Below are positions 4,250 to 63,643 of a stretch of 64,000 bases of DNA, one piece after another. The stretch covers positions 81,158,001 through 81,222,000 of the forward strand of contig NC_135655.1 of assembly GCF_964188315.1 (NCBI RefSeq), read 5' to 3'. Below the pieces are notes generated by a model. The model saw only the letters and a list, made by a program, of their open reading frames with translations. It was not told the DNA's origin and made no database searches. How positions within the stretch are numbered: the first letter of the stretch is position 1; every line of letters starts with the position of its first letter. The position numbers were made by a program, and so were the translations under genes. The DNA comes from Podarcis muralis (taxonomy: Eukaryota).

Positions 4250-4439
4250 AGGAATTGGTACATATGACCTGGCATGAGATAAAAAGAGAGACCGATGACG
4301 GAGAAAGTGATATCACCACCAAGATGTCAACAGGCCACTTCCATTTCTAAACATGTACAATAAACCAAGCAGCCACTGGAGGGCAGACTCCCCCTTTTTG
4401 CAAATAAAGATCTCCGTCTCGCAAGACAACAGCTGTCTT

Positions 4440-32883: not shown

Positions 32884-33831
32884 CTAGCTGTCAAACTTTT
32901 TGGGGGGAAACACTCTTCTTCGAAAGGCTCTCCTCAGTGCCTCTTTCAGTTCCTTGTTTCTCATGCTATAGATCAGGGGGTTCAGTAGGGGAGTGACAAA
33001 GGTGTAGACCACAGAAACCACTCGCCCCTCCTGTGGTGAGTAGCTAGAGTTGGGCCGTAAGTATATGAAACTGCAACAGCCATACTGTAAGAGGACTACC
33101 ATCAAGTGGGAGGAGCATGTGGAGAAAGCTTTTTGCTGGCCTTCAGCAGAACGGATTTGCAAAATGGCCACTGCAATGAAGATATATGAGATACAGATTA
33201 GAAGGAAGGGTATGGTGAGGACTACAACACTAACTATGAAGAGAACAGCTTGGTGAATGTGGGTGTCACTACAAGCCAACTGCAGAATGACTGGGATATC
33301 ACAAAAGAAATGATTGATTGCATTTTGGCCACAGAATGGTAAGCGGAAAATAAGGATTGTCAGCTGTAGAGACAACAGAAAGCCCAGCAGCCAGGATGCC
33401 GCTACGAGGGAAGTACATACTGTTTTGTTCATGATGAGCATGTAGCGCAGTGGATGACAAATTGCCACGTATCTATCGTATGCCATGATGGCCAGTAAGA
33501 CACAGTCAGCTCCTCCCAGGAAGACAAAGAAGAACATTTGGGTTCCACAGCCACTTAAGGATATGGTGGCACTTTTCCTGGACAGAAGGTTGGCCAAAGC
33601 CAATGGAGCAATGGCAGAAGAGTAGCAGATCTCCAGAGCTGCCAGGTTGCCCAAGAAAAAATACATGGGGTTATGGAGAGAGTGGTCGACATGGACAATA
33701 AGTACGACAGCAGCGTTCCCACAGAGGCTGAGGACGTAGAGGAGCAGAAAGAGAAGGAAAATGGCCAGCTGTGTCTCAAGCAAGGTTGAGAAGGGACGGA
33801 AATAGAATTCAGTATGGTTTTCATATCCCAT
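32884..33831 (-). CDS. OR10V1: Olfactory receptor OR-E, OR10V1-like, intact, 315 aa
   Basis: Tandem duplicate of OR-D with 15 aa differences; all motifs intact. Confidence 0.95.
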   Translation of the reverse strand: MGYENHTEFYFRPFSTLLETQLAIFLLFLLLYVLSLCGNAAVVLIVHVDHSLHNPMYFFLGNLAALEICYSSAIAPLALANLLSRKSATISLSGCGTQMFFFVFLGGADCVLLAIMAYDRYVAICHPLRYMLIMNKTVCTSLVAASWLLGFLLSLQLTILIFRLPFCGQNAINHFFCDIPVILQLACSDTHIHQAVLFIVSVVVLTIPFLLICISYIFIAVAILQIRSAEGQQKAFSTCSSHLMVVLLQYGCCSFIYLRPNSSYSPQEGRVVSVVYTFVTPLLNPLIYSMRNKELKEALRRAFRRRVFPPKKFDS

Positions 33832-36160: not shown

Positions 36161-36908
36161 AGTGGCAAATTTCACAACCAGGGAATGAAGGGGAAAGAGA
36201 GCAGCTCTTTGGCACACCCATCCTTTTTCCTGGTTCTGAAGCTCTTCCTTTAGAAAGCATGCCAAGACTCTTAAGGAAGCGAGGGTGAGAAGGGAAACTT
36301 TCTTTCCTGAACTGCAGGCATTAGGCTTTATATGAGAGAGTGAACTCTCTTGTGGCTGTTCTTACACAGGAATGGAAGGAAGTGCGAAGTACTTGGAGAT
36401 AAAAAAATAAGACTCTAACTATTGGTATACTCACATGACTTGTGAGTGGCGAGAAGTTCTGGGAGATGCAGTGGTGACCTGGGTTTAGATACCTTTGGGG
36501 GAAAGCCATAGGAGGCTTATAGCATTTCATAATATTTACAAATATACAGGTTGAGCATAGGTATCTTGCCAGACCACTTAAATATTACAAGAGTTGACTG
36601 CTCCCACATGACATCTCTATAGAGGCAACCAGGGCTCCAATAATCCTCTTAATTGGAGCCCAAACTCAGCTGCAACTGTCTCCTTGCCCATATTTGTCTC
36701 AATCCCATTTGAAATCTGTGGTCTCTAATTTTTTTCATGAATACAAAACTTGATTCTGTCATCAGCTACGAGTGTGAGAAGAGTAAGGCATGTCCCACTT
36801 CAGATATATCCTACCCACAGAGCCAGTAATCAAAGGGGTCTGGCAACTTTGCCACATACTAATACAATTTTTTATTTTTTATTTTTTTGTTACTCTCTCC
36901 CCTATAAA

Positions 36909-37163
36909 GCCAGTGTGGTGTAGTGGTTAAGAGCGGTAGACTCATAATCTTGTGAACCGGGTTCGTGTCTCCGCTCCTCCACATGCAGCTGCTGGGTGAC
37001 CTTGGGCTAGTCACACTTCTCTGAAGTCTCTCAGCCCCACTCACCTCACAGAGTGTTTGTTGTGGGGGAGGAAGGGAAAAGGAGATTGTTAGCCACTTTG
37101 AGACTCCTTCGGGTAGTGATAAAGCGGGATATCAAATCCAAACTCCTCTCCTCCTCCTCCTCT
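36909..37163 (+). mobile_element. tRNA-derived CORE SINE (Squam3/Ther1-like)
   Basis: A box TGGTGTAGTGG, B box GGTTCG, MIR-core-like gggtgaccttgggctagtcac and (CCT)n tail; second copy at 44732-44984. Confidence 0.85.
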
Positions 37164-37457
37164 ATTGATCTCCTTGTGCCCAAATTTCCAGTCTTTTACA
37201 ACAATATGGACAAACATATGCCACATTTCCTGGACTAAAGAACAGCGTACGGCATAGTTTACAATAAACATGGAAAGAATCAGGATTTATTCTAGGTTTC
37301 ACAAGAAAGGAGATTCTGCCTAAAGATTAGGAATCGCTTTCTGACAATCTCTCCTTCACTGGAGGTTTAAAGCAGAGGTTGGACAGCTGTTTGTCAGGGA
37401 CATTTAAGTTGTGATTCCTGCATCACTGGGGGTTGGGCTAGATGGCCCTTGGGATTC

Positions 37458-40400
37458 AAGAAGTTACATGAGACTCTGATGGACTATATGGATTACAATA
37501 TGATTTTGATGGGAGATATGAATGGTGTGGTGTCTACAAATATGGACAAGGCACAGAGACAGGTAGTCACCAAGGATGGAAGACTACCAAAAACTTTCTT
37601 TGATATGAAAATATGGATTTAGTTGATATCTGGAGAATGAAGAACCCCCTGGGAAGAGAGGCAACCTTCTTCTCTGAGGCTAAAATGACATGGACAAGAA
37701 TTGACCAAATTTGGGTAACTAGAGGACTGGCTCCGAAGACTAGTAAAGTGGAAATCTGCCCCAAAACTTGCTCCGACCATAATGCCGTGAAGATGGAAAT
37801 GAAACTGACGCCAATTGGCTCCTTTAGATGGAGGATGAATGACACTTTGTTTAGGAATGAAGAATTCACTAAGAAGGCCCAAAAAACTTTGAGAGACTAC
37901 TTTGAGATAAATATGAACACTACTGTGGAAAAAAGAGTAATTTGGGATGCAAGCAAAGCGGTCATGAGAGGATTTCTGATACAACAGAATGCAATTAAGA
38001 AGAGAATTCAAAATGAGAAAAAAGATAAAATCCTGGGGAAAGTAAAGGAAGGAGAGAAGAAACTGAGGGTGAAACCAAAGTCGCAGGAGATTTTGAAAGA
38101 GATAAAGTTATATCAAGTACAATATATGAAAATGATGAATCAGGAAATAGAATGGAAGATTAAACAGATGAGACAAAAGACATTTGAATCGGCAAATAAG
38201 TGTGGAAAACTGTTGGCTTGGCAAATGAAAAAAAGACAAAAACTTAATACCATTACGAATCTGGAAGTGGAAGGAAAGAATATACAGAACCCAGTGGAAA
38301 TTAGAAAGTGCTTCCAGAGGTATTTCAAAAAACTATATACACAGGAGACGCAGAAAGAAATGGACATTGATAAATTTTTGAAAATTAATGGACTACAAAA
38401 AATTTCCCAGGAAAATAAGTTAATGCTGAATTATAAAATAACGGAGCAGGAAGTAGAAGGGGCCATTCAGAACATGGAATTGGGTAAATCCCCAGGACCG
38501 GACGGATTGACTTCAAGATACTACAGATCTCTGAAAGAATGGCTAATACAACCTTTAAAGGAAGTCTGTAATGAAATACTGGAAGGGAAAAGGGCACCAG
38601 AGTCGTGGAAGGAAGCATATATTACACTTATACCGAAAACAGAGACTGAAAAGACACAGCTCAAGAACTACCGCCCCATATCACTGCTTAATGTGGATTA
38701 TAAAATTTTTGCAGATATTTTGGCTAGAAGATTAAAAAAGGTGTTAGCAGAAGAAATTCATAAAGATCAAGCGGGTTTTCTCCCGGGCAGACACTTGTCT
38801 GACAATACGAGGAATATAATTAATATCTTAGAAAAACTACAAGTGAAGATTAATACTAAAGCAGTTTTGATATTTGTGGACGCGGAGAAAGCCTTTGACA
38901 ATATTTCTTGGAGTTTTATGAAGAAGAATTTACAGGGGATGGGGGTTGGTCAAGGTTTTGGAAATGGTATAGGTGCAATTTATTCAGAACAGAAGGCTAA
39001 ATTAATTGTGAATAACGTAGTGATGGAAGAATTTAAGATTGAGAAAGGAACACGACAAGGTTGCCCAATCTCTCCATTGCTTTTTATATTGGTCCTGGAG
39101 GTTTTCCTAAATATGATTAGAAGGGACCAATTGGTAAAAGATATACAAGTGGGAGCTAAACAGTACAAACTGAAAGCATTTGCTGATGATTTGGTATTGA
39201 CTTTACAGGAGCCAGAATCTAGTACTAAAAGAGTACTGGAATTGATTCAAGAATTTGGTCAGGTAGCAGGCTTTAAGTTGAACAAGACGAAAACTAAGGT
39301 TTTAGAGAAAAATCTAACCGAGATTGAGAGAGATAAGTTTCAGAAGGAGACAGGATTAACACTGGTTAAGAAAGTGAAATATTTAGGGGTTAACATGACT
39401 GCTAAGAGCGTGAATTTATTTAAGGATAACTATGAAAAATGTTGGACTGAAGTGAAAAAGTATTTAGAAATATGGTCAAATTTGAAGTTATCGCTGTTAG
39501 GCCGAATTGCTGTGATAAAAATGAATGTATTGCCAAGGATGCTGTTTCTGTTTCAAACATTGCAAATTTTGGACAAAATGGACTGTTTCAAGAAGTGGCA
39601 GAGAGATATCTCTAGATTTGTCTGGCAGGGCAAGAAGCCTCGTATAAAATTTAAGATATTAACTGATGCTAAAGAAAGAGGTGGATTTGCCCTGCCAGAC
39701 CTTAAACTTTATTATGAATCAGCCGCTTTTTGCTGGCTGAGAGAATGGATGCTTCTTGAAAACGCTGATGTGTTGGATTTGGAAGGTTTTAACAATGTAT
39801 TTGGTTGGCATGCATATCTGTGGTATGACAAGGTTAAAGCACACAAAGCGTTTAAAAACCATATTGTCAGGAAAGCACTGTTTAATGTCTGGATAAGATA
39901 TAAGGACTTGTTAGAAAATAAAATCCCGAGATGGCTGTCACCAATGGAAGCAAAGGCTCAGAAAAAACTCAATATGGAGGCCAAATGGCCGAAGTATTGG
40001 GAAATTCTGGAACAAGAGGGAGACAGATTAAAACTGCAGAATTTTGAAAAATTAAAAAACAGAGTGCGAGACTGGCCCCATTATTATCAAATAATGGAGG
40101 CATATAATTTGGATAAAAAACTAGGCTTCCATGGGGAAAAATCAAAATTGGAAACAGAATTGTTAGACCCCAAAGTTAAGAATCTGTCAAGAATGTATAA
40201 CTTGCTGCTGAAATGGAATACTCAGGATGAAACGGTGAAATCTGCTATGATTAAATGGGCACAAGATGTTGGACATAACATTATGATGGCTGACTGGGAA
40301 CAGTTATGGACCACAGGTATGAAGTTTACGGCATGTAATGCCTTAAGAGAGAATCTAATGAAAATTATTTATAGGTGGTACATAACACCAGTCAAGCTTG

Positions 40401-41230
40401 CAAAAATCTACCATCTGCCCGATAATAAATGCTGGAAATGTAATGAGACTGAAGGTACATTCTTTCACCTTTGGTGGACATGCCCAAGGATTAATAATTT
40501 CTGGGAGATGATTTATAATGAAATGAAAAAGGTATTTAAATACACCTTTCTGAAGAAACCAGAGGCCTTTCTCCTGGGCATGGTTGGCCAATTGGTGCCA
40601 AAGAAGGATAGAACTTTCTTTATGTATGCTACAACAGCAGCAAGAATACTCATCGCAAAGTACTGGAAGACACAAGATCTACCCACCCGGGAAGAATGGC
40701 AGATGAAGCTGATGGACTACATGGAATTGGCAGAAATGACTGGCAGAATCCGAGACAGGGAGAAGAGTCGGTGGAAGAAGATTGGAAAAAATTTAAAGTA
40801 TATTTACAGAAATATTGTAAAATTAATAAATGTTAGAAGGATGCTGGAATGAAGTTATATGGCTTTAGCAGAAATGTTATAAAGAATTAAGTAAAAATAG
40901 ATTGTTAATGGGTCAAAGTGGAAAATTTAAGGTTAGATTGTGTTAAGATAAATTATAGAACAAAAATCGAGAAAGATGGAAAGGATTTGCTGAAATAGCT
41001 AATTGAACTAGAATACAAAAAAGGGAGGTGTGAGGAGGTCGATGAAACAAGTAAATGAAAGGTAAAGATATGGAAATATTGGATGTGTTTTTAAATGTTT
41101 TTGCTTTTCTTGTCGTTTTGTTGTATTGTTTTTTGTTTTTATTTTTGATGTATTGTGAACTTTTTATTGTTTCTTTTTTCTTTCTTCTGTAACTATTAAA
41201 CCTTTAATAAATATCATTTTTTTAAAAAAA
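37458..41230 (+). mobile_element. L1-clade (L1/Tx1) LINE, 5'-truncated within the endonuclease domain
   Basis: 19-bp TSD tagatggcccttgggattc (37439-57, 41231-49); AATAAA and A7 tail; ORF2 has EN (GDMN, SDHNAV), RT (KSPGPDG, GTRQGCPISPLLF, FADD) and C-terminal CWKC...HLWWTC motifs. Confidence 0.97.
37613..40852 (+). pseudogene. L1 ORF2 (EN remnant, RT, Zn-knuckle): 1079-codon open stretch bounded by frameshifts at ~37605 and ~40756
   Basis: Upstream EN codons (KKLHETLMDY...GDMN) are in another frame; the sibling copy at 24178-24188 has the C missing at 40756. Confidence 0.9.
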
Positions 41231-41272: not shown

Positions 41273-43149
41273 CACTGGGCAACAATTTTTTACTTTTTGA
41301 ATGTTGTCTAGATTTCTACAACTGATTTAGGGTATTTTTGCACTGCTGAATCAGGAAATGGCATCCATTTCTCTCCATCAGGTCAGGTTTTCTGTAAACT
41401 GAATGGTGGGCATTGATAAAGGTAAGTACACGTAAATTGCATGTTGCTTCACCATTTTTCAAACTTCAGGGCTTGAACTTCTGTTTCTTGGAACTCCTGG
41501 AATGCTCAGCGGCAGGGAGGTCTCTCTTCAGAGTCCAACAGTAGTCAGCCATCATGACTGTGTCCCAGCGACCCTGATACCTGGTCTCCATCTCTTTCAT
41601 GTTCTGATGGAATCTCTCCCCCTGCTCGTCACTCATTGAACCCAGGTTCTCAGGAAACCGGTCCATATGTGAAAATAGGTAGTGCATCTTGACGCTCATG
41701 TTGCAGCCCAGGTTTCTGAAAGCAGTCAGCATGTTGTTGACAAGTTCTGCGTAGTTTCTGGCCTTATTGTTGCCAAGAAAGTTCTTCACTACCAGAACAA
41801 ATGCCTTCCACGCTTCCAGTTCCACTTTGTTCATTGAGTTTCCGAACTCTGGATCTCTGATGAGCTAACGGATCTGAGGACCGTCAAAGATGCCATGGCA
41901 CAAGTAAGTGAAACAATCACCATCCTTGTCCAGAGCCTTGGTGAACTGCTTGATTAAGCCGAGCTTGATGTGCAGCAGTGGGAAGAGTATTCTGTCTCTG
42001 TCCACCAGAGGGTCGTTGATGACGTTCCTTTCTTTACAAGGCACCAGTTCCTCCTGCACAGGCCAGTCCTTCTTTGTGTAATGCTGAGCACGGTCCCTAC
42101 TATCCCACATGCACAGAAAACATGGGTACTTGGTGAAGCCAGACTGTTGTCCCAACAAAAAGTTCACAACCTTCAGGTCAACACAAATAAACCACTTATG
42201 CTGATCATAACCAATTTTCTCCAGCACATACTTCACCGCTTCATAGTTCTCCTTCAGTGTACTCGAGTGAGCCAGGGGTATAGAGGCAAACTGGTTGCCG
42301 TTGTGTAGCAGAACACATTTCAGTGATCGCTTGCTGCTGTCAATGAACAGTCTCCAATCTTTGGGTTCGTACTGTGGCACTCCAAGCTTGAGCAGAAGCT
42401 GCGCAATATCTGCACAGTACACCAAGTCCTTCTCTTCCGAGAAAAAACGGAGGTACTCTTGATGCCTGTTGCGCAAGAAGCTGATGCAAGCACTGTCAGA
42501 GAGGAGGTTTTTTTCCTTCAATCTGGATGCCAACAGTTTGGCAGAGTCCTTTGACAAGCTGAGGTCGCGAACTAGATCATTCAACTCCTTTTGGGAAAAT
42601 GGATGTGGAGCATCATCTTCAAGAACCACTTCTTCTTCATGTCCTTCAACACTGGAGGCATCTTCGTCACTAATGTCAGGAAGTTCTCCGAAGATAGGCA
42701 CTGGAATTTCATCACAATGAGCTTCAGGACGACATGCTGATTGAAGATCAGGATACTTTGTGGGGTGGCTGCCCCATTAACTTAGTTTTGATCCCCCAAC
42801 TTTATGCTTTGCTGGACCAATTTATGGAAGATTTCAAGGTTTTATGACTTCAAACTGATCCCTTTTCGACATAATCACCCAGAACTATCGGACCTGAATA
42901 CTTCTTGTCATTAAAATAATCATTTCCAATCAAAACAATTATTTGACAAGGCATTTTACCCCCACCAACTTCTTCTAAAATGCTCCACACAAGCGTACAT
43001 GTGAACAAAAACGTAAAAAAAGACATGTGGCCATAGCTCAAAAACTTGACATGATTGAGCAAAACCAATGTGATTTTTGGATTCAGCGCATCAGATTCAT
43101 CCTAAATCAGCTGAAAAAATGCAGACAACAAATTTGTTGTTGACCAGTG
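41273..43149 (-). mobile_element. Chapaev3-type (CMC superfamily) DNA transposon, 1877 bp
   Basis: Termini cactgggcaacaa / ttgttgaccagtg (12/13), 3-bp TSD TTA, subterminal ctgatttagg...gctgaatc inverted similarity, and transposase motifs DSSKRSLKCVLLHNGN, LHIKLGLIKQF, SDEQGERFHQ. Confidence 0.88.
41466..42775 (-). pseudogene. Chapaev3 transposase pseudogene
   Basis: ORFs 41865-42701 and 41466-41834 are one frame split by a single TAG (PQIR*LIRDPEF). The frame extends upstream through KYPDLQSACRP. An apparent in-frame deletion lies before GIFDGPQIR. Confidence 0.85.
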
Positions 43150-44529
43150 TTATTCTCCCCCCCCCCCCGCACATTGTGCAAGAAACCAGTACATTGTTCA
43201 CCCCTGAACCTAAAAGGAGGAAGAAGAAGGAAGAGACAGAAAGAAAAAATAACAAAGAAATATGGAAACACAGGAAATGAAAAAGACAGTGAGGGAGAAG
43301 GATGTGCCTTGGAAACAATGGGAGAGTAAGGGGAAGAAATCATTTCCTTTCCTTAACCTACATTTGGGTACCGAGGTTCCACCACAAAGCATTGACTATG
43401 AAGCTGAGCCCATTTTCCAAATTATTTTTGTGACTAGGATTTCCCCTCAGTTATAAAATGGCTATTATCCCTGTAAAATATATTGAATATTTTATTCGCT
43501 GTTATGGTCTACTCATGGTTACTGGAGATTTTCACAAAATTACTGCTCCAAAACTGTGTATTGGTTGCCTCTAACTCATGCATTCTAACTCTGTCTAGAA
43601 TAAGGTCCAGGACACACTTATTAAAACAATATATTGATTAATATCAACACATCTGCCTGTCCTTCCCTTTGTCTGGGGACCTTGTGCATCTGAGCCTAGC
43701 TAGGTCAGTCTGTTGGACATAGCAGAAGGAATCGTTGTCTCAGCCAAGGATTCTCTCTGAGATGCTGCCTTCTCTTGAACTGAACTTTCCAGAAGTCTGG
43801 TCCTGTAACTTGAGTCTTCTTCAAGGCGTAGTTCTCCAGGATAAAGTGAAGGACAAAACTAATACCAGAAAACAGGAATGAATCTCCAGGAATCCTGGGA
43901 ACACAGCAAAGGCCTGTCCTATGCCATGGCTATTGTTATAATTGAGAAAACGAGAAAGAACCAAGGCCTAAGTTCTAGTGAAGGGCTGAGCAGGAAATTG
44001 TCATTTGAGAACCGTAGCTGCTGGAGACAATTTTTAGACCATAGGCTGCTGGTCACTAACACCACTTTGCCCTTTTTTCCAGCAAATTGAAAGAGCTTTG
44101 AAGGAAGAGCTTTTGTTTGATGCACATATCCTCACACATCCTCGCTTCAGGCATTTTGTAAACTTGGGCCATTTGACCAAGCCACACCCTCTGACATCAG
44201 AGGTGAGGCAGGTGAAGATACAGCTGAACCAAAGGGGTTTGCAGGCTCCACCCATCAGCTGATTGGCAGCTCCTGCAAAGACCCAACTATCATCTGGTTA
44301 TCAGGATTTGCAAAGTGCCACGTGCAATGCTGTGCAAGCACCAATGATCAGCCCATTGTTAGGGCTTGCAGAGTATGCAAATCCTGGTGATCAGCTGATT
44401 GCTGGGACTTGCAGAGCATCAGCTGATCTGCAGTGCCTGCGAACTCCCTTTGGCTCAGCGGTCTCTTTACCTGCCCTGCACCTAGCGACTGTGATGATAT
44501 AATCCACCACCTTTCTTCTTTATCCTTCA

Positions 44530-44543
44530 CTGCCCTCTAGTGG
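44530..44543 (-). promoter_or_regulatory. CTCF core motif (CCACTAGAGGGCAG on minus)
   Basis: 14/14 match to CCASYAGRKGGCRS. Confidence 0.7.
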
Positions 44544-44731
44544 TGCGTTTATTTTATTTTTATCCTGCTACCATGTCAATATTGAACTGTTGGCAGAAAA
44601 AAACCCTTATGAATTTGAGAGAGAGAGAGAGAATTTTAACATAGATCATCTAGCCACATCCTATGCTTGTGGAGACTTATAGCCATATTTAAAACTGTTA
44701 CATTCCATAATAAAAATATCAAGAAAATAAA

Positions 44732-44984
44732 GCCAGTGTGGTGTAGTGGTTAAGAGCAGTAGTTTCGTAATCTGGGGAACCGGGTTCGCGTCTCCGCTCC
44801 TCCACATGCAGCTGCTGGGTGACCTTGGGCCAGTCACACTTCTTTGAAGTCTCTCAGCCCCACTCACCTCACAGAGTGTTTGTTGTGGGGGAGGAAGGGA
44901 AAGGAGAATGTTAGCCGCTTTGAGACTCCTTAAAGGGAGTGAAAGGCGGGATATCAAATCCAAACTCTTCTTCTTCTTCTTCTT
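44732..44984 (+). mobile_element. tRNA-derived CORE SINE (Squam3/Ther1-like)
   Basis: A/B boxes, core and (CTT)n tail; ~90% identical to 36909-37163. Confidence 0.88.
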
Positions 44985-45618
44985 GATGGGTCCTGGTGCT
45001 CAAGGTGACTTATATTACGTATATTTAAAATAGCCACATCCCATATTGAATGCACACACACAAAATAAAACTTAAAACGTTTGTGGCACTTTGGTGTGTG
45101 AGAGAGAAAGAAAGAAAGAAATTCCAGAGGGGCCATCTGGTTAGGCAGCAATAGATTGTAATGGGTTGCTCTGAAGTTATTTCAGCATGGGGGGGTGGGG
45201 GGTGTCACCCCAACACCACCTGCCCACCACTGTGTTCTGTCCTGTATTTTGCTAGAATAACTAGAGGGAGGCAGGATCCAGATCAGGACCCTAGTATGGG
45301 GGTTGGAGGCTTTAAATCTTTCACTCTCCTGCGGCTCCAATATGCATCTATGTGCAGCAGAGGCATACCTGCAACTTGCATTGCAGAAAAAGTTCCCATT
45401 AATTTCAGAGGCAATGAATTGGCCTTCTCTAGGATGCTGACATGGGGGTAGTGTGCTTTGTGCTCCCAAATCATGTGAGTCTGGATTTTGCCACTCGTGC
45501 TCTCTGGACAAGATAGATCACATACATCTCTTACAGGTTGTGCTAAATACAGCACAGAGATTCGTTTTAAAAGAGGTCTTCGTCAGCGTTGCAGATTTCT
45601 CTGAAGGGTATTTCTTGT

Positions 45619-45632
45619 CCAGCAGATGGCAG
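45619..45632 (+). promoter_or_regulatory. CTCF core motif (CCAGCAGATGGCAG)
   Basis: 14/14 match to CCASYAGRKGGCRS. Confidence 0.72.
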
Positions 45633-46256
45633 TCAGAGCACTTTGGCTCTGCTGTACTACATCATTAAATAAAAAGCCGGCATTTGTTTTTACACAAGGG
45701 AAGCTTAAAGCTGCTCTTGTTCCAGACACATTTGTAATTTGATTGTGAAACGTATTGGTCAGAAAGAATGCTTGGCTGTATTACAAATAACAAATAACAA
45801 CCCTCTGATTTCTCTTCCACATAGACAGTGATCGTATTTTTTTTAAAAAAAAGAATAGCTGGATGGAGGGTCAAAAGTGAGGTAACCCTCAGGTTTGAAA
45901 ATGCTTGAAAAACAGAACTCCTACATTGCAGTCACTTGGCATGTTCTGCATGCAGCAACACATTTTTGGTGCCAGATGACAGTTTCTAGCACTTGCAATT
46001 TGGATGCCAAGTATACAAGAAATGGCAGGGAGATTTTCTTTCCTGCAAGCCATTTATGTGATTAAAGTCTGCCCAACTCTTGCTCTAAGTATAAAGTAAA
46101 GACAGATTCATCCCTAAGGCAAACTGTATTTTCAGTGTAATGGGAATAAATATGACATCTTCAGGATTACCCAAACATGATACTTTGTCACTAAGGCTTA
46201 TTTCAAATATTTTGTTTACAAACTGATTTCCTTTTCTCTCTCAGCCCCAGACCATA

Positions 46257-46463
46257 CAGTAGTACCTCGGGTTAAGAACTTAATTCATTCTGGAGGTCCA
46301 TTCTTAACCTAAAACTGTTCTTAACCTGAGACACCACTTTAGCTAATGGGGCCTCCCGCTGCCGCCACACGTTCTCATCGTGAAGCAAAGTTCTTAACCT
46401 GAGGTACTACTTCCGGGTAGCGGAATCTGTAACCTGAAGCGTCTATAACCCAAGGTACCACTG
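46257..46463. mobile_element. Tigger-like MITE, 207 bp
   Basis: TIRs cagtagtacctcgggtta / taacccaaggtaccactg with TA flanks. Confidence 0.85.
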
Positions 46464-50305: not shown

Positions 50306-51284
50306 GCTATATACTTGTAATGGATTTCACAGGGCTGAAGTCAAGTAAAATAGATATTGTTGACCTGTGGGTAATGTAGGGGGCAGTGGCAACTCCATGA
50401 GATATTTGGCACTGAGAAATAAAATTATGCAGCCTATAGAGATAATAGACATATATCATATTATAATATTATTTATATACATGATCTGTAGTTTGCATGA
50501 TTTGCTGCCTGATTTGACTTGTGAAAGGGGCATGGAATGTTTGAGGAATGGTCTTCCTCTTGTGGTGTATCAGTCTCTCTCATTAACTGTAGTTGAAATT
50601 TAAAAGCATTCCTGTTTACCCAGGCATTTGATGGCTGAAAGACACTGGCCAAGGCAACTTTGAGATTAGTGACTGTGATGGTATTATGTTGTTGCTTATA
50701 AATGTTCTAAATGGTTCTAGCTGTTTTTAGTTTGTTTTTAAATGTTTTAATTTTGAACTGTATTGCTTTAACTTTTTGATTTTTGCTCCTATGGATGTCT
50801 TTGAGAGAAAGGGTAGGATAGAAATGTAAGAAATAAGTAAATGCAAGTTGCAGAGCAATAGAAACTGAACTTCCAGTATTCTGAATTATTTTTTTTTTTA
50901 AGGTGCTCTTTACTGGGACAGCTTGTGTGGTGCTGTTATTTGTGTTTTATTGTGTTTACTTCCTGATTTGTGTTTTTTTAATCTGGAAGCTACTTTAAGT
51001 GCACATCATGGAGGAGTGAACTTTAAACACCAGCTTTCTCTGCTCTTGGGGCAGCTTAATGAATAAAGAATATATAAAATTAGCAGTTAAAATAAGCAAA
51101 CAAATGGCTATATCGTTAAATTTGATAAATAACTGCAAAGAGTTATTTATCTTGTGGTCGTAGCATCTCAGAGGTTCTATTTATTTATTTTGCAAAACCT
51201 CAAATGTGCACAAGGTATGCACAGGAATGATTCGCAACATTACCAATTGCTTTCGAATAAAAAAAGAAACAAGAAATAAAACTC

Positions 51285-51920
51285 AGTGCCCGCTTCCTCT
51301 GCAAGAATAGCCGCGCTCTGGCCCTTTAAGAGGGCAACGCCTCCTTACGCAGGGGAGGGAATAAAGCAGCGTCCTCCTCCTCATAGCGGGACCGGGAATA
51401 GAACGGGACTCCCTGCACGCATGCGCGCCTCAGTGATCTACGCAAGAGGAAACCTGTGTGGTGGACTTCATGGGACTACGTCAAGACGCAGGGCACGCAT
51501 CAGGGGGCGGGGTCCCGAAGCTGGAGAAGGATCCGCGCGGAGCCTCCCGGGCGCTGCGTGGGGCGTGGGGGGGCAGGGAGCCTCCGCGCCCCGCGAACCA
51601 TGTTCCGCTACCAGGTGAGGAAACGCTTTGTCGGGGTGTGGGCGCTGCCGGGCCTCCCTCCCTCGCTCGGGCGGAAGCGCCCAGGGCCACCCTTGCCGTG
51701 ACCTTTGACCCGTATTTGGAACTCTCGGCTCTCTTCTCTCCCCCCTCCCCCAAGCTGTCCGGCGCCGCGTGCTGGAAGAGAGGGGCCGCTCTAGGAGTCT
51801 GTGGACAATGACCCAGGAGGACCCCTGTCCGTGAACCCGGTGGAGTCTGATCTAGGCTGTGGGTGAGGGGGGGGGGGGAGCAGCCCCTTCCCGTTCCCTC
51901 AGCTCAAGGGGGCGGGTCTC
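51285..51920 (+). promoter_or_regulatory. CpG-island promoter of PATL1
   Basis: Abrupt GC and CpG enrichment; NRF1-like CACGCATGCGCG (51416-27, 11/12); GC box GGGGCGGGG (~51504-12); no TATA; surrounds the ATG exon. Confidence 0.88.
51600..51614 (+). CDS. PATL1: PATL1 coding exon 1 (MFRYQ)
   Basis: accATG followed by CAG|gtgagg. Confidence 0.9.
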
Positions 51921-60900: not shown

Positions 60901-63643
60901 TACAGTATGTCTGCCGCAAAAAATCTACATAAAATCATATTTTTTTGGAAGAATAATTTGGTGGGCATCCAACTCATTCCTGTTCATTGGAGCCCTCATT
61001 TTCCACTGATTCTACAGAAGTGGATTCCCTGCAGCAACAGAAGGTTGGGCTTGATGGCCGTCTGACACACCTTCCACTCTGATTCTGTGAAGGACTTGGA
61101 GATTATCCTGGACTTCCGAATGGAACTGGAGTGGCAAAAAGAAGTAGGAATAGGAAAAGGAATGATTAATTCAGGCAGTTCATAATCTTAACAAAATTAG
61201 TTGCCTCAAGTGGAAGATAGCTGCTAGTTTAGATGGAAGGGAATTTAGACAGTTCATGGGTCTGTATTGATAGCAATACAGCCAAAATGGCTGGAAATTG
61301 AACCTCCATATGTTGGGGGCAGTGTGTCTCCAGGGAGGAGGTGCAGAGACCAAAAAGGGATACCTATTGCCACTAAGCTGTTTTGGAACATCTGGTTTGC
61401 CACTGGAAGCAAACTCAACAGATGTTTAGCTTTACTTTGCAATACAATTCTTAGGATGATAGGCCTCAGTATCCTATGCAGCTAACTCCCTATCTATTGC
61501 TTTTCTATTTTTTTAAGCCTTCACCAAAATCTGCTTGCGTGTATTGGCTTTATCTCTGTAACTAGGATGAGAATTTTGTTTTTATTGCCAGTTTTTCTGA
61601 TGCGGTCTTTGGCACAGTGATCATACCCCAGAGTACTGTGTCTCTCTGTGGAGGTATTTCTCAACATCCTGTGGTTATGCTGGTCACCCCTTCAAGGAAT
61701 ATCCTGCAAGTAACTTCATGGCCTGTCACAACAGAGCAAACTGGTGACTGGGGTGAAATTTGCTTATTCAGAAGAAATTTAGCCTCTTTTACCTGCTCTT
61801 AAGTTTGGAAGCTTAGAGCCATGAACTTGCATGCTGGATTGACCCCAGGTTGTTTCTTGGGACATGTAAAAATACAGCTGAAGGAATTTGCTTGAGTGCA
61901 TCTGTTCTTCTCAGACTTGTCTTGTGCCAAGAGACTTCGTATAAATCCCAGACCGCTGTCCTGGAGCACTTGCATGCTGTGTCCTACTGTGTACAGTGGT
62001 ACCTTGGTTCTTGAACTTAATCCGTTCTGGGAGTCTGTTCGACTCCTGAAACTGTTCGAAAACCAAGGCGCGGCTTCTGATTGGCAGCAGGAGCTTCCTG
62101 CACTCAAGCGGAAGCCGTGTTGGACATTCGGCTTCCAAAAAACATTTGCAAACCGGAACACTTACTTCCAGGTTTGCAGTGTTTGGGAGCCAATGTGTTC
62201 AGCAACTGAACCATTCGGGAACCAAGGTTCCACTGTAATTGGTCTGTACTTTTCCTGAATTTTGTGGCACCCCTTTCAGTCAGCACCGGAGCTTAAATGG
62301 GTCAGCAGGGGACAGAGGGAGCCACCGGAATAGCCACCAGGAGCAGATCAGGAAGGACCCTTACGCCAATCTCATGCTGCAGCGGGAAAAGGACTGGGTG
62401 TCCAAGATCCAGATGATGCAACTGCAAAGCACTGATCCATACCTGGATGACTTCTACTATCAGGTTGGTGCTTCATGGAGGCCCATTGTAGCACTCTGCT
62501 TCTTGTCTTGCTGGGGACAAGTTTCCCGTCTTGGGTTAAAGGGTTCTGTGCCTCTAGGTTTCTAACCAGCTTTCTCTTCCTTTAGAACTATTTTCAGAAG
62601 CTGGAAAAATTATCTGCAGCTGAGGAAATGCATGGTGATGGTCCCAAAAAAGAGCGCACCAAACTAATCACCCCACAAGTTGCCAAGTTAGAGCATGCCT
62701 ACAAGCCAGGTAAGTACCCTTGTGCACCAAGGACTGATCTGAGTGCATGTAGCAGGAGGAGGAACTAGAATCCAGATGTGGAAGGGAGGACTGTGCTACT
62801 TCAGCCTTGCATGGGGTGGGGGTGGGGTAGGCAAAGAATGCCCTGCAAATAGAAAAATAGCACATGGGGAGATGTGTTCCTTGTGCTAAGCTTCTATTCA
62901 CGTGGTGTCTTTAATATGGAGGATCATTAGAAACATACTCCCCTCCCTCCCGCTACTTGTTGGGAGTGATTTAACCTGTTCTGCTCCCTCAGGATTCTAC
63001 CATCTCATTCTGCTGCATATGAAAACTTCACCCTATATACCATTCCAGGGCTTGGGGAGTAAAGGAAGGCAAGCTTAGACACAAGGAACAGATTTCCTTG
63101 TAGGTCTGCATGTATTTGAGCCCAAAATATAGCCTCATTTCCTAGATGGTTGATTAGGAAAGCACAGTTTGGTTGATGGAGTGAAAATGTAATTGGGAAG
63201 GGATGGGGACATTATAATTTTGTGTAGCAATAGCAAGATGTTAGGGCAGGTAGGTTCGCTCATGCAATTTCACCTGCATTGCCTTTTATTTATGTTTGCA
63301 GTGCAGTTCGAAGGCTCACTGGGGAAGCTCACAGTCTCCAGTGTGAATAACCCCCGCAAGATGATTGATGCTGTTGTGACGTTACGAGGGGAAGAAGATG
63401 TAAGTTTCTCTGGCTAGGATTACTTGGGCTCCCTCCATAGATAGCATAATGCTATGGGTTTGTCATCTTTCTTCTCAAATATGGGTTCTTGCCGTTGTCA
63501 AACCTTGTTCCTGCTCAGGTTGCAGAGGGGAACTTTCCTGTTCAGTGGGAACTTTTCTTAGCATGTCTTGCACTCTTCCTTAGGAGACAAAGGAGAAGCA
63601 GGTTCGAGATAAAAGGCGTCAGACTCTCTTCACTATTGAGAAG
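51600..63643 (+). CDS. PATL1: PATL1 (PAT1 homolog 1, mRNA decapping/P-body scaffold), coding exons 1-13; continues beyond the window
   Basis: Exons join in frame with GT-AG introns and translate to [16 protein letters not shown]...[16 protein letters not shown]...[37 protein letters not shown]...[23 protein letters not shown], matching recalled vertebrate PATL1. Confidence 0.97.
53292..53573 (-). mobile_element. Putative solo LTR in PATL1 intron 1
   Basis: On minus: TG...CA with TATAAA then AATAAA; no TSD found. Confidence 0.45.
57001..57112 (+). CDS. PATL1: PATL1 exon 2
   Basis: ttaag|TCC...ATTG|gtgagt; [13 protein letters not shown]...FGAGAI. Confidence 0.95.
57486..57700 (+). CDS. PATL1: PATL1 exon 3
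   Basis: tgcag|ATGATGAC...CAG|gtgtgc; [17 protein letters not shown]...TRPPVQ. Confidence 0.95.
57826..57903 (+). CDS. PATL1: PATL1 exon 4
   Basis: [26 protein letters not shown] with AG/GT boundaries. Confidence 0.93.
58164..58358 (+). CDS. PATL1: PATL1 exon 5
   Basis: [18 protein letters not shown]...[15 protein letters not shown]...NQQ with AG/GT boundaries. Confidence 0.95.
58949..59050 (+). CDS. PATL1: PATL1 exon 6
   Basis: [10 protein letters not shown]...[12 protein letters not shown] with AG/GT boundaries. Confidence 0.93.
59862..59951 (+). CDS. PATL1: PATL1 exon 7
   Basis: [11 protein letters not shown]...[11 protein letters not shown] with AG/GT boundaries. Confidence 0.95.
60342..60547 (+). 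CDS. PATL1: PATL1 exon 8
   Basis: [12 protein letters not shown]...[13 protein letters not shown]...HLQNLR; phase 0 to phase 2. Confidence 0.9.
60645..60734 (+). CDS. PATL1: PATL1 exon 9
   Basis: [29 protein letters not shown]; donor gtgagt. Confidence 0.95.
61994..62235. mobile_element. Tigger-like MITE, 242 bp, in PATL1 intron 9
   Basis: TIRs cagtggtaccttggttc / gaaccaaggttccactg (16/17) with TA flanks. Confidence 0.88.
62280..62463 (+). CDS. PATL1: PATL1 exon 10
   Basis: [16 protein letters not shown]...[37 protein letters not shown]. Confidence 0.96.
62586..62709 (+). CDS. PATL1: PATL1 exon 11
   Basis: [14 protein letters not shown]...[20 protein letters not shown]; donor gtaagt. Confidence 0.96.
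63302..63399 (+). CDS. PATL1: PATL1 exon 12
   Basis: [33 protein letters not shown]; donor gtaagt. Confidence 0.96.
63584..63643 (+). CDS. PATL1: PATL1 exon 13
   Basis: [20 protein letters not shown]; donor gtaagt. Confidence 0.95.

What the first reader, a model, noticed from the sequence alone, without database searches (positions are those of the whole stretch)
44530..45632. Divergent pair of perfect CTCF cores between the OR cluster and PATL1: candidate insulator
CCACTAGAGGGCAG (minus, pointing at the ORs) and CCAGCAGATGGCAG (plus, pointing at PATL1) lie 1.1 kb apart. They are the only perfect matches to CCASYAGRKGGCRS I found. Under uniform composition the pattern occurs once per ~4.2 million positions, about 0.03 expected in this window on both strands. 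Divergent CTCF pairs are the standard signature of loop-domain boundaries. The position is where a barrier would be needed between a heterochromatinised OR array and a CpG-island housekeeping promoter 6 kb away. If conserved with mammals, it would be an amniote-age boundary.
Basis: partly seen in the sequence, partly recalled or inferred. Interest (0 to 1): 0.72.

Follow-up and report, generated by a model that had tools for sequence, protein, structure and literature searches.

The report
Conserved CTCF motif pair upstream of PATL1
Two back-to-back CTCF-type motifs between a smell-receptor gene cluster and the housekeeping gene PATL1 in a lacertid lizard are real, single-copy and each conserved across distantly related squamates, so they are very likely genuine CTCF sites and a plausible domain boundary; CTCF binding and insulation are untested.

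Summary
The window has exactly two perfect matches to CCASYAGRKGGCRS: 44530-44543 on the minus strand, facing the OR genes, and 45619-45632 on the plus strand, facing PATL1. Shuffles predict 0.03.

Neither motif lies in a repeat. Read depth is about 1x at both, against about 30,000x for the SINE between them. That SINE is a young, polymorphic insertion.

Both motifs are old.
- **Site 1:** the identical 14-mer, in the same orientation upstream of PATL1, occurs in Varanus, Elgaria and Pantherophis. Anolis carries an in-consensus variant and Zootoca a weakened copy. Motif identity is 0.95, against 0.26-0.70 in the flanks.
- **Site 2:** exact in Zootoca, and present with two in-consensus changes and alignable flanks in the skink Tiliqua. 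It is absent in the four Toxicofera species.

Four of five substitutions stay inside the degenerate consensus (P about 0.002), which is the pattern expected under selection for CTCF binding.

The pair as such is seen only in lacertids. Crocodile and gecko show no strong site within 10 kb, so an amniote age is not supported. CTCF occupancy, cohesin and insulation were not testable here.

Verdict: a new member of a known kind, a conserved candidate CTCF boundary. The same scan noted CTCF-type motifs elsewhere in this genome, behind VH genes.

The parts
44530..44543 (-). Site 1: CTCF-consensus core CCACTAGAGGGCAG, pointing towards the OR cluster
   Evidence: Exact match. Single copy by read depth. 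Identical 14-mer in the same orientation upstream of PATL1 in Varanus, Elgaria and Pantherophis; 13/14 in Anolis and Zootoca. The sister species has an A->G change at the R position, still within the consensus.
44506..44555 (-). Conserved footprint around site 1: A-rich stretch, core, then TGAAGGA
   Evidence: This is the only 50 bp of the interval that aligns to Elgaria (82%). In alignment A1, mean pairwise identity is 0.95 in the core, 0.70 in the next 10 bp and 0.26 further out.
44515..44731 (.). Weakly conserved non-coding stretch to the right of site 1, ending at the SINE insertion point
   Evidence: blastn to Varanus L004:1071-1287 at 67%, E 6e-18. Its right end aligns to Sceloporus L002:30-108, which places the Sceloporus site 1 just outside the fetched flank.
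44732..44982 (+). Young SINE insertion between the two motifs; not part of the conserved element
   Evidence: About 30,000x read depth. Absent in another sample of the same species and in the sister species, and absent in Zootoca. A second copy lies at 36904-37183.
45619..45632 (+). Site 2: CTCF-consensus core CCAGCAGATGGCAG, pointing towards PATL1
   Evidence: Exact match. Single copy. Unchanged in the sister species while its flanks changed. Exact in Zootoca L005:3755. Tiliqua L007:1890 has CCAGTAGGTGGCAG with alignable flanks (z about 11).
45586..45662 (+). Flanks of site 2 shared with the skink (left TTGCAGATTTCT..CTGAAGGGTA, right TGGCTC..TGCTG)
   Evidence: Long-gap local alignment to Tiliqua scores 28.9 against a null of 14.1 +/- 1.4.
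51280..51900 (+). PATL1 CpG-island promoter and exon 1 (ATG at 51600, MFRYQ then a GT splice donor)
   Evidence: CpG observed/expected 0.72 and GC 0.56 in 51-52 kb. Sequence read. The promoter aligns to all nine PATL1 loci.
32884..33831 (-). Nearest intact olfactory receptor gene on the other side of the pair
   Evidence: Pfam 7tm_4, E 4.5e-53. Called as a gene in the source assembly.

Best explanation
Both 14-mers are genuine CTCF-binding sites kept by selection. Together, in lacertids, they form a divergent boundary element about 6-7 kb upstream of the PATL1 CpG-island promoter.

Inferred mechanism, from the established loop-extrusion model:
- CTCF bound at the minus-strand site 1 halts cohesin coming from the OR-cluster side.
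- CTCF bound at the plus-strand site 2 halts cohesin coming from the PATL1/OSBP side.
- The OR array and the broadly expressed PATL1-OSBP unit therefore sit in separate contact domains and do not share regulatory input.

Shown here: motif quality, single-copy status, orientation, position, deep conservation and motif-aware substitutions.

Inferred only: CTCF and cohesin occupancy, insulation, and the chromatin state of the ORs.
For: - **Rarity.** There are 2 exact consensus matches against 0.03 expected. In 387 kb of nine other PATL1 loci, all 6 exact matches fall at these two orthologous places and none elsewhere, against 0.09-0.18 expected.
- **Single copy.** Both sites have about 1x read depth.
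- **Site 1 conservation.** The 14-mer is identical and in the same orientation in Varanus (-8.9 kb), Elgaria (-8.1 kb) and Pantherophis (-4.0 kb). The chance of this is about 4e-5 per species. Anolis has an in-consensus C->G change. The flanks decay to 0.26 identity while the core stays at 0.95.
- **Site 2 conservation.** Exact in Zootoca. Present in the skink Tiliqua with two in-consensus changes and significant flank similarity.
- **Substitution pattern.** 4 of 5 substitutions seen in orthologues stay inside the degenerate consensus; P is about 0.002-0.003 under neutrality.
- **Precedents.** CTCF sites separate the beta-globin clusters from flanking OR genes (PMC12452803). Predicted CTCF sites flank venom-gene TADs in a snake (PMC6442385). 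Diverging CTCF sites are described as signatures of ancestral TAD borders (Gomez-Marin et al. 2015, as cited in PMC12326840).
Against: - No ChIP, ATAC or Hi-C evidence could be examined.
- Outside lacertids only one of the two sites is found: site 1 in Toxicofera and site 2 in the skink. Zootoca's site 1 is weakened at the first core C.
- Gecko and crocodile lack a strong site in the 10 kb available.
- OR adjacency in the other species could not be checked, because no OR lies within their 10-kb flanks.
Confidence: 0.6

Rival explanations
1. The motifs do bind CTCF, but their role is not to insulate ORs from PATL1. They could anchor promoter-proximal loops for PATL1/OSBP regulation. Alternatively, site 1 alone could close a loop over the OR cluster, for example with the weaker plus-strand site at 4373, and so organise OR regulation rather than protect PATL1.
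For: - Most lineages keep only one of the two sites, so a paired boundary is not required.
- The third-best CTCF-like site in the window (4373, plus strand) is convergent with site 1 across four ORs.
- From general knowledge, barrier activity at the chicken HS4 insulator is separable from CTCF binding.
Against: - The position is exactly between two very different kinds of gene.
- In lacertids the arrangement is the divergent one typical of borders.
- A single oriented site still blocks extrusion from one side, so one site can still act as a boundary.
Confidence: 0.22
2. The conserved blocks serve something other than CTCF: another DNA-binding factor with an overlapping motif, or the 3' end of a minus-strand non-coding transcript. 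An invariant AATAAA lies just upstream of site 1 on the minus strand.
For: In alignment A1 an A-rich block including AATAAA is conserved next to the core. Conservation extends about 7-10 bp past the 14-mer.
Against: - Conservation peaks on the 14-mer itself (0.95), not on the A-rich block (0.60).
- Substitutions follow the degeneracy of the CTCF consensus.
- Two independent elements 1 kb apart both match the same rare consensus.
- No Rfam family reaches its threshold.
- Extension beyond the 14-mer is expected from the 19-20-bp CTCF footprint.
Confidence: 0.1
3. The motifs are chance matches or repeat-borne motifs with no function.
For: One of 100 shuffles gave two matches. A young SINE and a low-copy palindromic element lie right beside site 1.
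Against: - Both sites are single copy by read depth.
- The SINE is a later insertion, absent in relatives.
- Identical 14-mers sit at the orthologous place in lineages whose flanks no longer align.
Confidence: 0.03

Closest known systems
CTCF sites flanking the beta-globin clusters (chicken 5'HS4 and 3'HS; mouse and human 5'HS5 and 3'HS1), which separate globin genes from neighbouring olfactory receptor genes
   Same: CTCF-type motifs sit at the junction between OR genes and a differently regulated gene. They are conserved between distant species and are interpreted as sub-TAD boundary or enhancer-blocking elements (PMC12452803).
   Different: Binding and insulation are untested here. The protected neighbour is a CpG-island housekeeping gene, not a tissue-specific cluster with an LCR. 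The two sites are 0.85-1.1 kb apart and divergent, rather than lying at the two ends of a domain.
Diverging CTCF sites at ancestral TAD borders (Gomez-Marin et al. 2015 PNAS, cited in PMC12326840)
   Same: Back-to-back, outward-pointing motifs that are evolutionarily conserved, at a junction of two gene neighbourhoods.
   Different: Conservation is shown only within squamates. In most lineages only one half of the pair is retained. No Hi-C border has been demonstrated.
Predicted CTCF sites flanking venom-gene TADs in the prairie rattlesnake (PMC6442385)
   Same: A squamate tandem gene-family cluster bounded by sites predicted with the vertebrate CTCF matrix.
   Different: That study had Hi-C contact domains to go with the motifs. 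This one has phylogenetic conservation instead.

Membership tests
CTCF-binding site | Match to the CTCF core consensus or matrix | tested here: met
   Both are exact matches to CCASYAGRKGGCRS.
CTCF-binding site | Evolutionary constraint that follows the motif: invariant positions fixed, changes confined to degenerate positions | tested here: met
   12 of 14 site 1 columns are invariant in six species. 4 of 5 substitutions stay in the consensus, P about 0.002.
CTCF-binding site | CTCF occupancy in vivo (ChIP-seq or CUT&RUN), usually with cohesin | not testable with these tools
   No ChIP or ATAC run was available. Reads were laid on WGS runs.
CTCF-binding site | Not simply carried by a young repeat family | tested here: met
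   Read depth is about 1x at both motif bins, against about 30,000x for the adjacent SINE.
Divergent-CTCF TAD border or insulator | Two outward-pointing sites close together | tested here: met
   Minus at 44530 and plus at 45619. The same layout occurs in Zootoca, with a weakened site 1.
Divergent-CTCF TAD border or insulator | The divergent pair itself is conserved across lineages | tested here: not met
   Varanus, Elgaria, Pantherophis and Anolis keep only site 1. Tiliqua keeps only site 2.
Divergent-CTCF TAD border or insulator | Insulation minimum in Hi-C, or enhancer-blocking activity | not testable with these tools
   Hi-C runs of this species exist (X20, X21) but could not be analysed here.
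   Crocodylus porosus has no strong site within 10 kb, though that flank holds 285 N. The gecko has none within 10 kb, but its site 1 position would fall outside the flank. Birds, turtles and mammals were not examined because the look-ups were exhausted.

The most novel reading that the evidence does not exclude
This is an ancient squamate domain border, dating at least to the common ancestor of skinks, lacertids and Toxicofera, at which lineages have kept alternative halves of an ancestral divergent CTCF pair. Toxicofera keep the OR-facing site, the skink keeps the PATL1-facing site, and lacertids keep both. That would be a natural experiment on how much of a divergent CTCF pair a boundary needs. 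It may extend, further than 10 kb upstream, to other amniotes that share the OR-PATL1-OSBP gene order.
Probability: 0.25. Interest if true: 0.55.

Novelty: new member of a known kind. Interest (0 to 1): 0.42.

Why it matters
- **Known kind, untested in lizards.** Conserved CTCF sites at borders of tandem gene-family clusters are well known, but almost nothing has been tested in lizards.
- **A precise candidate.** This locus offers two single-copy motifs with orthologues mapped in eight squamates.
- **A natural perturbation series.** The series comprises both sites, either site alone, a weakened site, and a polymorphic SINE that changes their spacing. It could be read out with Hi-C data that already exist for several of these species.
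- **What it would test.** Whether the rules of oriented CTCF boundaries, and the separation of OR arrays from housekeeping neighbours, hold in reptiles.

Tried and rejected
- **Gene identity by single exons.** Pfam and PDB searches with single PATL1 exons gave nothing. Identity came from the representative search and the named homologues instead.
- **Wasted look-ups.** Two look-ups went to non-longest isoforms, for Elgaria X3 and Gekko X2.
- **Assembly accession.** A paper search for the accession found nothing.
- **Sister-species conservation.** Rejected as evidence of constraint. At about 3% divergence a 14-mer survives by chance about 65% of the time.
- **Site 1 in Sceloporus.** Uninformative rather than absent, because the alignment puts it just beyond the 10-kb flank.
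- **Other readings checked.** There is no EBF/Olf-1 palindrome in the window, so an OR-enhancer reading is not supported. No tRNA or credible Rfam family is present. Bacterial promoter and terminator scans are irrelevant here.
- **Upstream CTCF module.** A TGCAG-type module near site 2 lies at the wrong spacing (by eye and from memory), so I did not use it.
- **Gomez-Marin 2015.** The paper is not held, so it is cited only through another paper's reference list.
- **Human sequence.** No human sequence was fetched or compared.

Full report
**Observation**

The window has exactly two perfect matches to the CTCF core consensus CCASYAGRKGGCRS. One is at 44530-44543 on the minus strand (CCACTAGAGGGCAG). 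The other is at 45619-45632 on the plus strand (CCAGCAGATGGCAG). Dinucleotide-preserving shuffles give a mean of 0.03 matches. Allowing one mismatch gives 4 matches against 0.78 expected. The order is minus then plus, which is the divergent, outward-pointing arrangement.

**Context**

- Five intact olfactory-receptor ORFs (Pfam 7tm_4) lie between 3.3 and 33.8 kb. A LINE ORF2 (RVT_1) lies at 37.6-40.9 kb.
- The only CpG island is at 51-52 kb. It holds an ATG at 51600 that encodes MFRYQ followed by a GT donor. Twelve further exons follow on the + strand.
- I searched exons one at a time by reference and built no joined model. Exon 10 (62281-62463) hits PAT1-family proteins that sources name 'protein PAT1 homolog 1'.
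- The source is assembly GCA_964188315.1, record OZ076954.1, near 81.18 Mb. The closest PATL1 is that of Zootoca vivipara, at the same position of a chromosome of the same size. The animal is therefore a lacertid. Earlier notes of this scan call it a wall lizard.
- OSBP follows PATL1 in all nine other loci fetched except Varanus and Crocodylus, where no downstream gene was called within the flank.

**Are the motifs in repeats?**

I laid raw reads at about 1.3x coverage, and contigs, at 80% likeness or more on 43900-46300.
- Both motif bins have depth about 0-3, which means single copy.
- The tRNA-derived SINE at 44732-44982 and another copy starting at 46255 reach about 30,000x.
- A 270-bp palindromic element at 44207-44475 reaches 8-10x and ends 55 bp from site 1.
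- The SINE is a later arrival. A contig from another sample of the same species joins 44731 to 44983, the sister species lacks it, and Zootoca lacks it.

The refutation 'lie within young repeats' therefore fails.

**Close relatives**

In the sister species (organism B, about 3% diverged) site 2 is unchanged while its flanks changed at 45604, 45605 and 45636. Site 1 carries T>C at 44536, which gives CCACTAGGGGGCAG, still within the consensus. At 3% divergence this is weak evidence on its own.

**Deep comparison**

I fetched PATL1 loci with 10 kb of upstream flank for Sceloporus, Anolis, Varanus, Zootoca, Elgaria, Tiliqua, Eublepharis, Pantherophis and Crocodylus.

Site 1:
- The identical 14-mer, on the same strand relative to PATL1, occurs in Varanus (-8.9 kb), Elgaria (-8.1 kb) and Pantherophis (-4.0 kb).
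- Anolis has CCAGTAGAGGGCAG (-6.1 kb), a change at the S position.
- Zootoca has GCACTAGAGGGCAG (-7.05 kb), a weakening change.
- The chance of the exact 14-mer on a given strand in 10 kb is about 4e-5 per species.
- In Elgaria only a 50-bp island around the motif aligns at all (82%). In Varanus about 220 bp aligns at 67%.
- In the six-species alignment the core has mean pairwise identity 0.95. The next 10 bp have 0.70, nearer flanks 0.45-0.60 and distant flanks 0.26.
- In Sceloporus the alignment places site 1 just outside the fetched flank.

Site 2:
- It is exact in Zootoca (-6.2 kb).
- In the skink Tiliqua, CCAGTAGGTGGCAG lies on the plus strand at -8.1 kb, with recognisable left and right flanks. 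The long-gap local score is 28.9 against a null of 14.1 +/- 1.4.
- It is not detectable in the four Toxicofera species, the gecko or the crocodile.
- The gecko does retain a conserved block just to the right of site 2 (45670-45790, z 9.2) but has no motif there.

**Motif-aware evolution**

Five substitutions are seen in orthologues. Four fall on degenerate positions and stay within the allowed pair of bases. Under neutrality P is about 0.002-0.003. Across 387 kb of the nine other loci, all six exact consensus matches sit at these two orthologous places and none elsewhere, against 0.09-0.18 expected. No Rfam family, tRNA or EBF site explains the conservation.

**Interpretation**

The sequence evidence makes it very likely that both are functional CTCF sites. 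Given the standard squamate phylogeny (general knowledge):
- site 2 dates at least to the common ancestor of skinks and Episquamata, and was lost in Toxicofera;
- site 1 dates at least to the ancestor of lacertids and Toxicofera.

The divergent pair as such is seen only in lacertids. Under loop extrusion, site 1 would stop cohesin arriving from the OR side and site 2 cohesin arriving from the PATL1/OSBP side.

This fits three precedents:
- CTCF sites separating beta-globin clusters from flanking ORs (PMC12452803);
- predicted CTCF sites bounding snake venom TADs (PMC6442385);
- diverging CTCF sites at ancestral TAD borders (Gomez-Marin 2015).

Several things remain inferred: occupancy, cohesin, insulation, and heterochromatin on lizard ORs. 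From general knowledge, the heterochromatin-barrier function at the chicken HS4 insulator is separable from CTCF. 'Enhancer-blocking or contact-domain border' is therefore safer wording than 'barrier'. The amniote-age idea has no support from the crocodile flank and was not tested in birds, turtles or mammals. No human sequence was used.

**Verdict**

This is a real, well-conserved candidate CTCF boundary. It is a new member of a known kind. The added interest is the lineage-specific retention of one or the other half of the pair.

Noticed in passing
window 44732-44982 (also 36904-37183 and from 46255): A tRNA-derived SINE with a (CTT)n tail, at about 30,000x read depth. The copy between the two CTCF motifs is absent in another sample of the same species, in the sister species and in Zootoca. 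It is therefore a young, polymorphic insertion that changes the motif spacing from about 0.85 to 1.1 kb.
   Followed up: partly
window 44207-44475: A roughly 270-bp imperfect palindrome built of units centred on ATCAGCTGAT. It has 8-10x read depth, is also present in Zootoca, and ends 55 bp from site 1. It is probably a low-copy MITE-like element.
   Followed up: partly
window 45670-45790; L008:508-592: A conserved non-coding block just to the right of site 2 aligns to the leopard gecko (z 9.2), although the gecko has no CTCF motif beside it. Its function is unknown.
   Followed up: partly
window 4373-4386 (+): CCACTGGAGGGCAG is one mismatch from the consensus and one base from site 1. It is the third-best CTCF-like site in the window and is convergent with site 1 across four OR genes, so it is a possible loop partner.
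   Followed up: no
window 41865-42701 (-): A 278-aa ORF with no Pfam hit that looks transposon-derived. It lies next to the LINE ORF2 at 37613-40852, and together they fill the gap between the last OR and the CTCF pair.
   Followed up: no
window 45115-45195: A short stretch with about 40x read depth (a G-run plus CCAGAGGGGCCATCTGG). It is a low-copy repeat or low-complexity sequence between the two sites.
   Followed up: no
L007:1777-1890 (Tiliqua): The left flank of the skink's site 2 appears locally duplicated: the GATTTCT..CTGAAGG module occurs two or three times. This inserts about 80 bp between the conserved flank and the motif.
   Followed up: no
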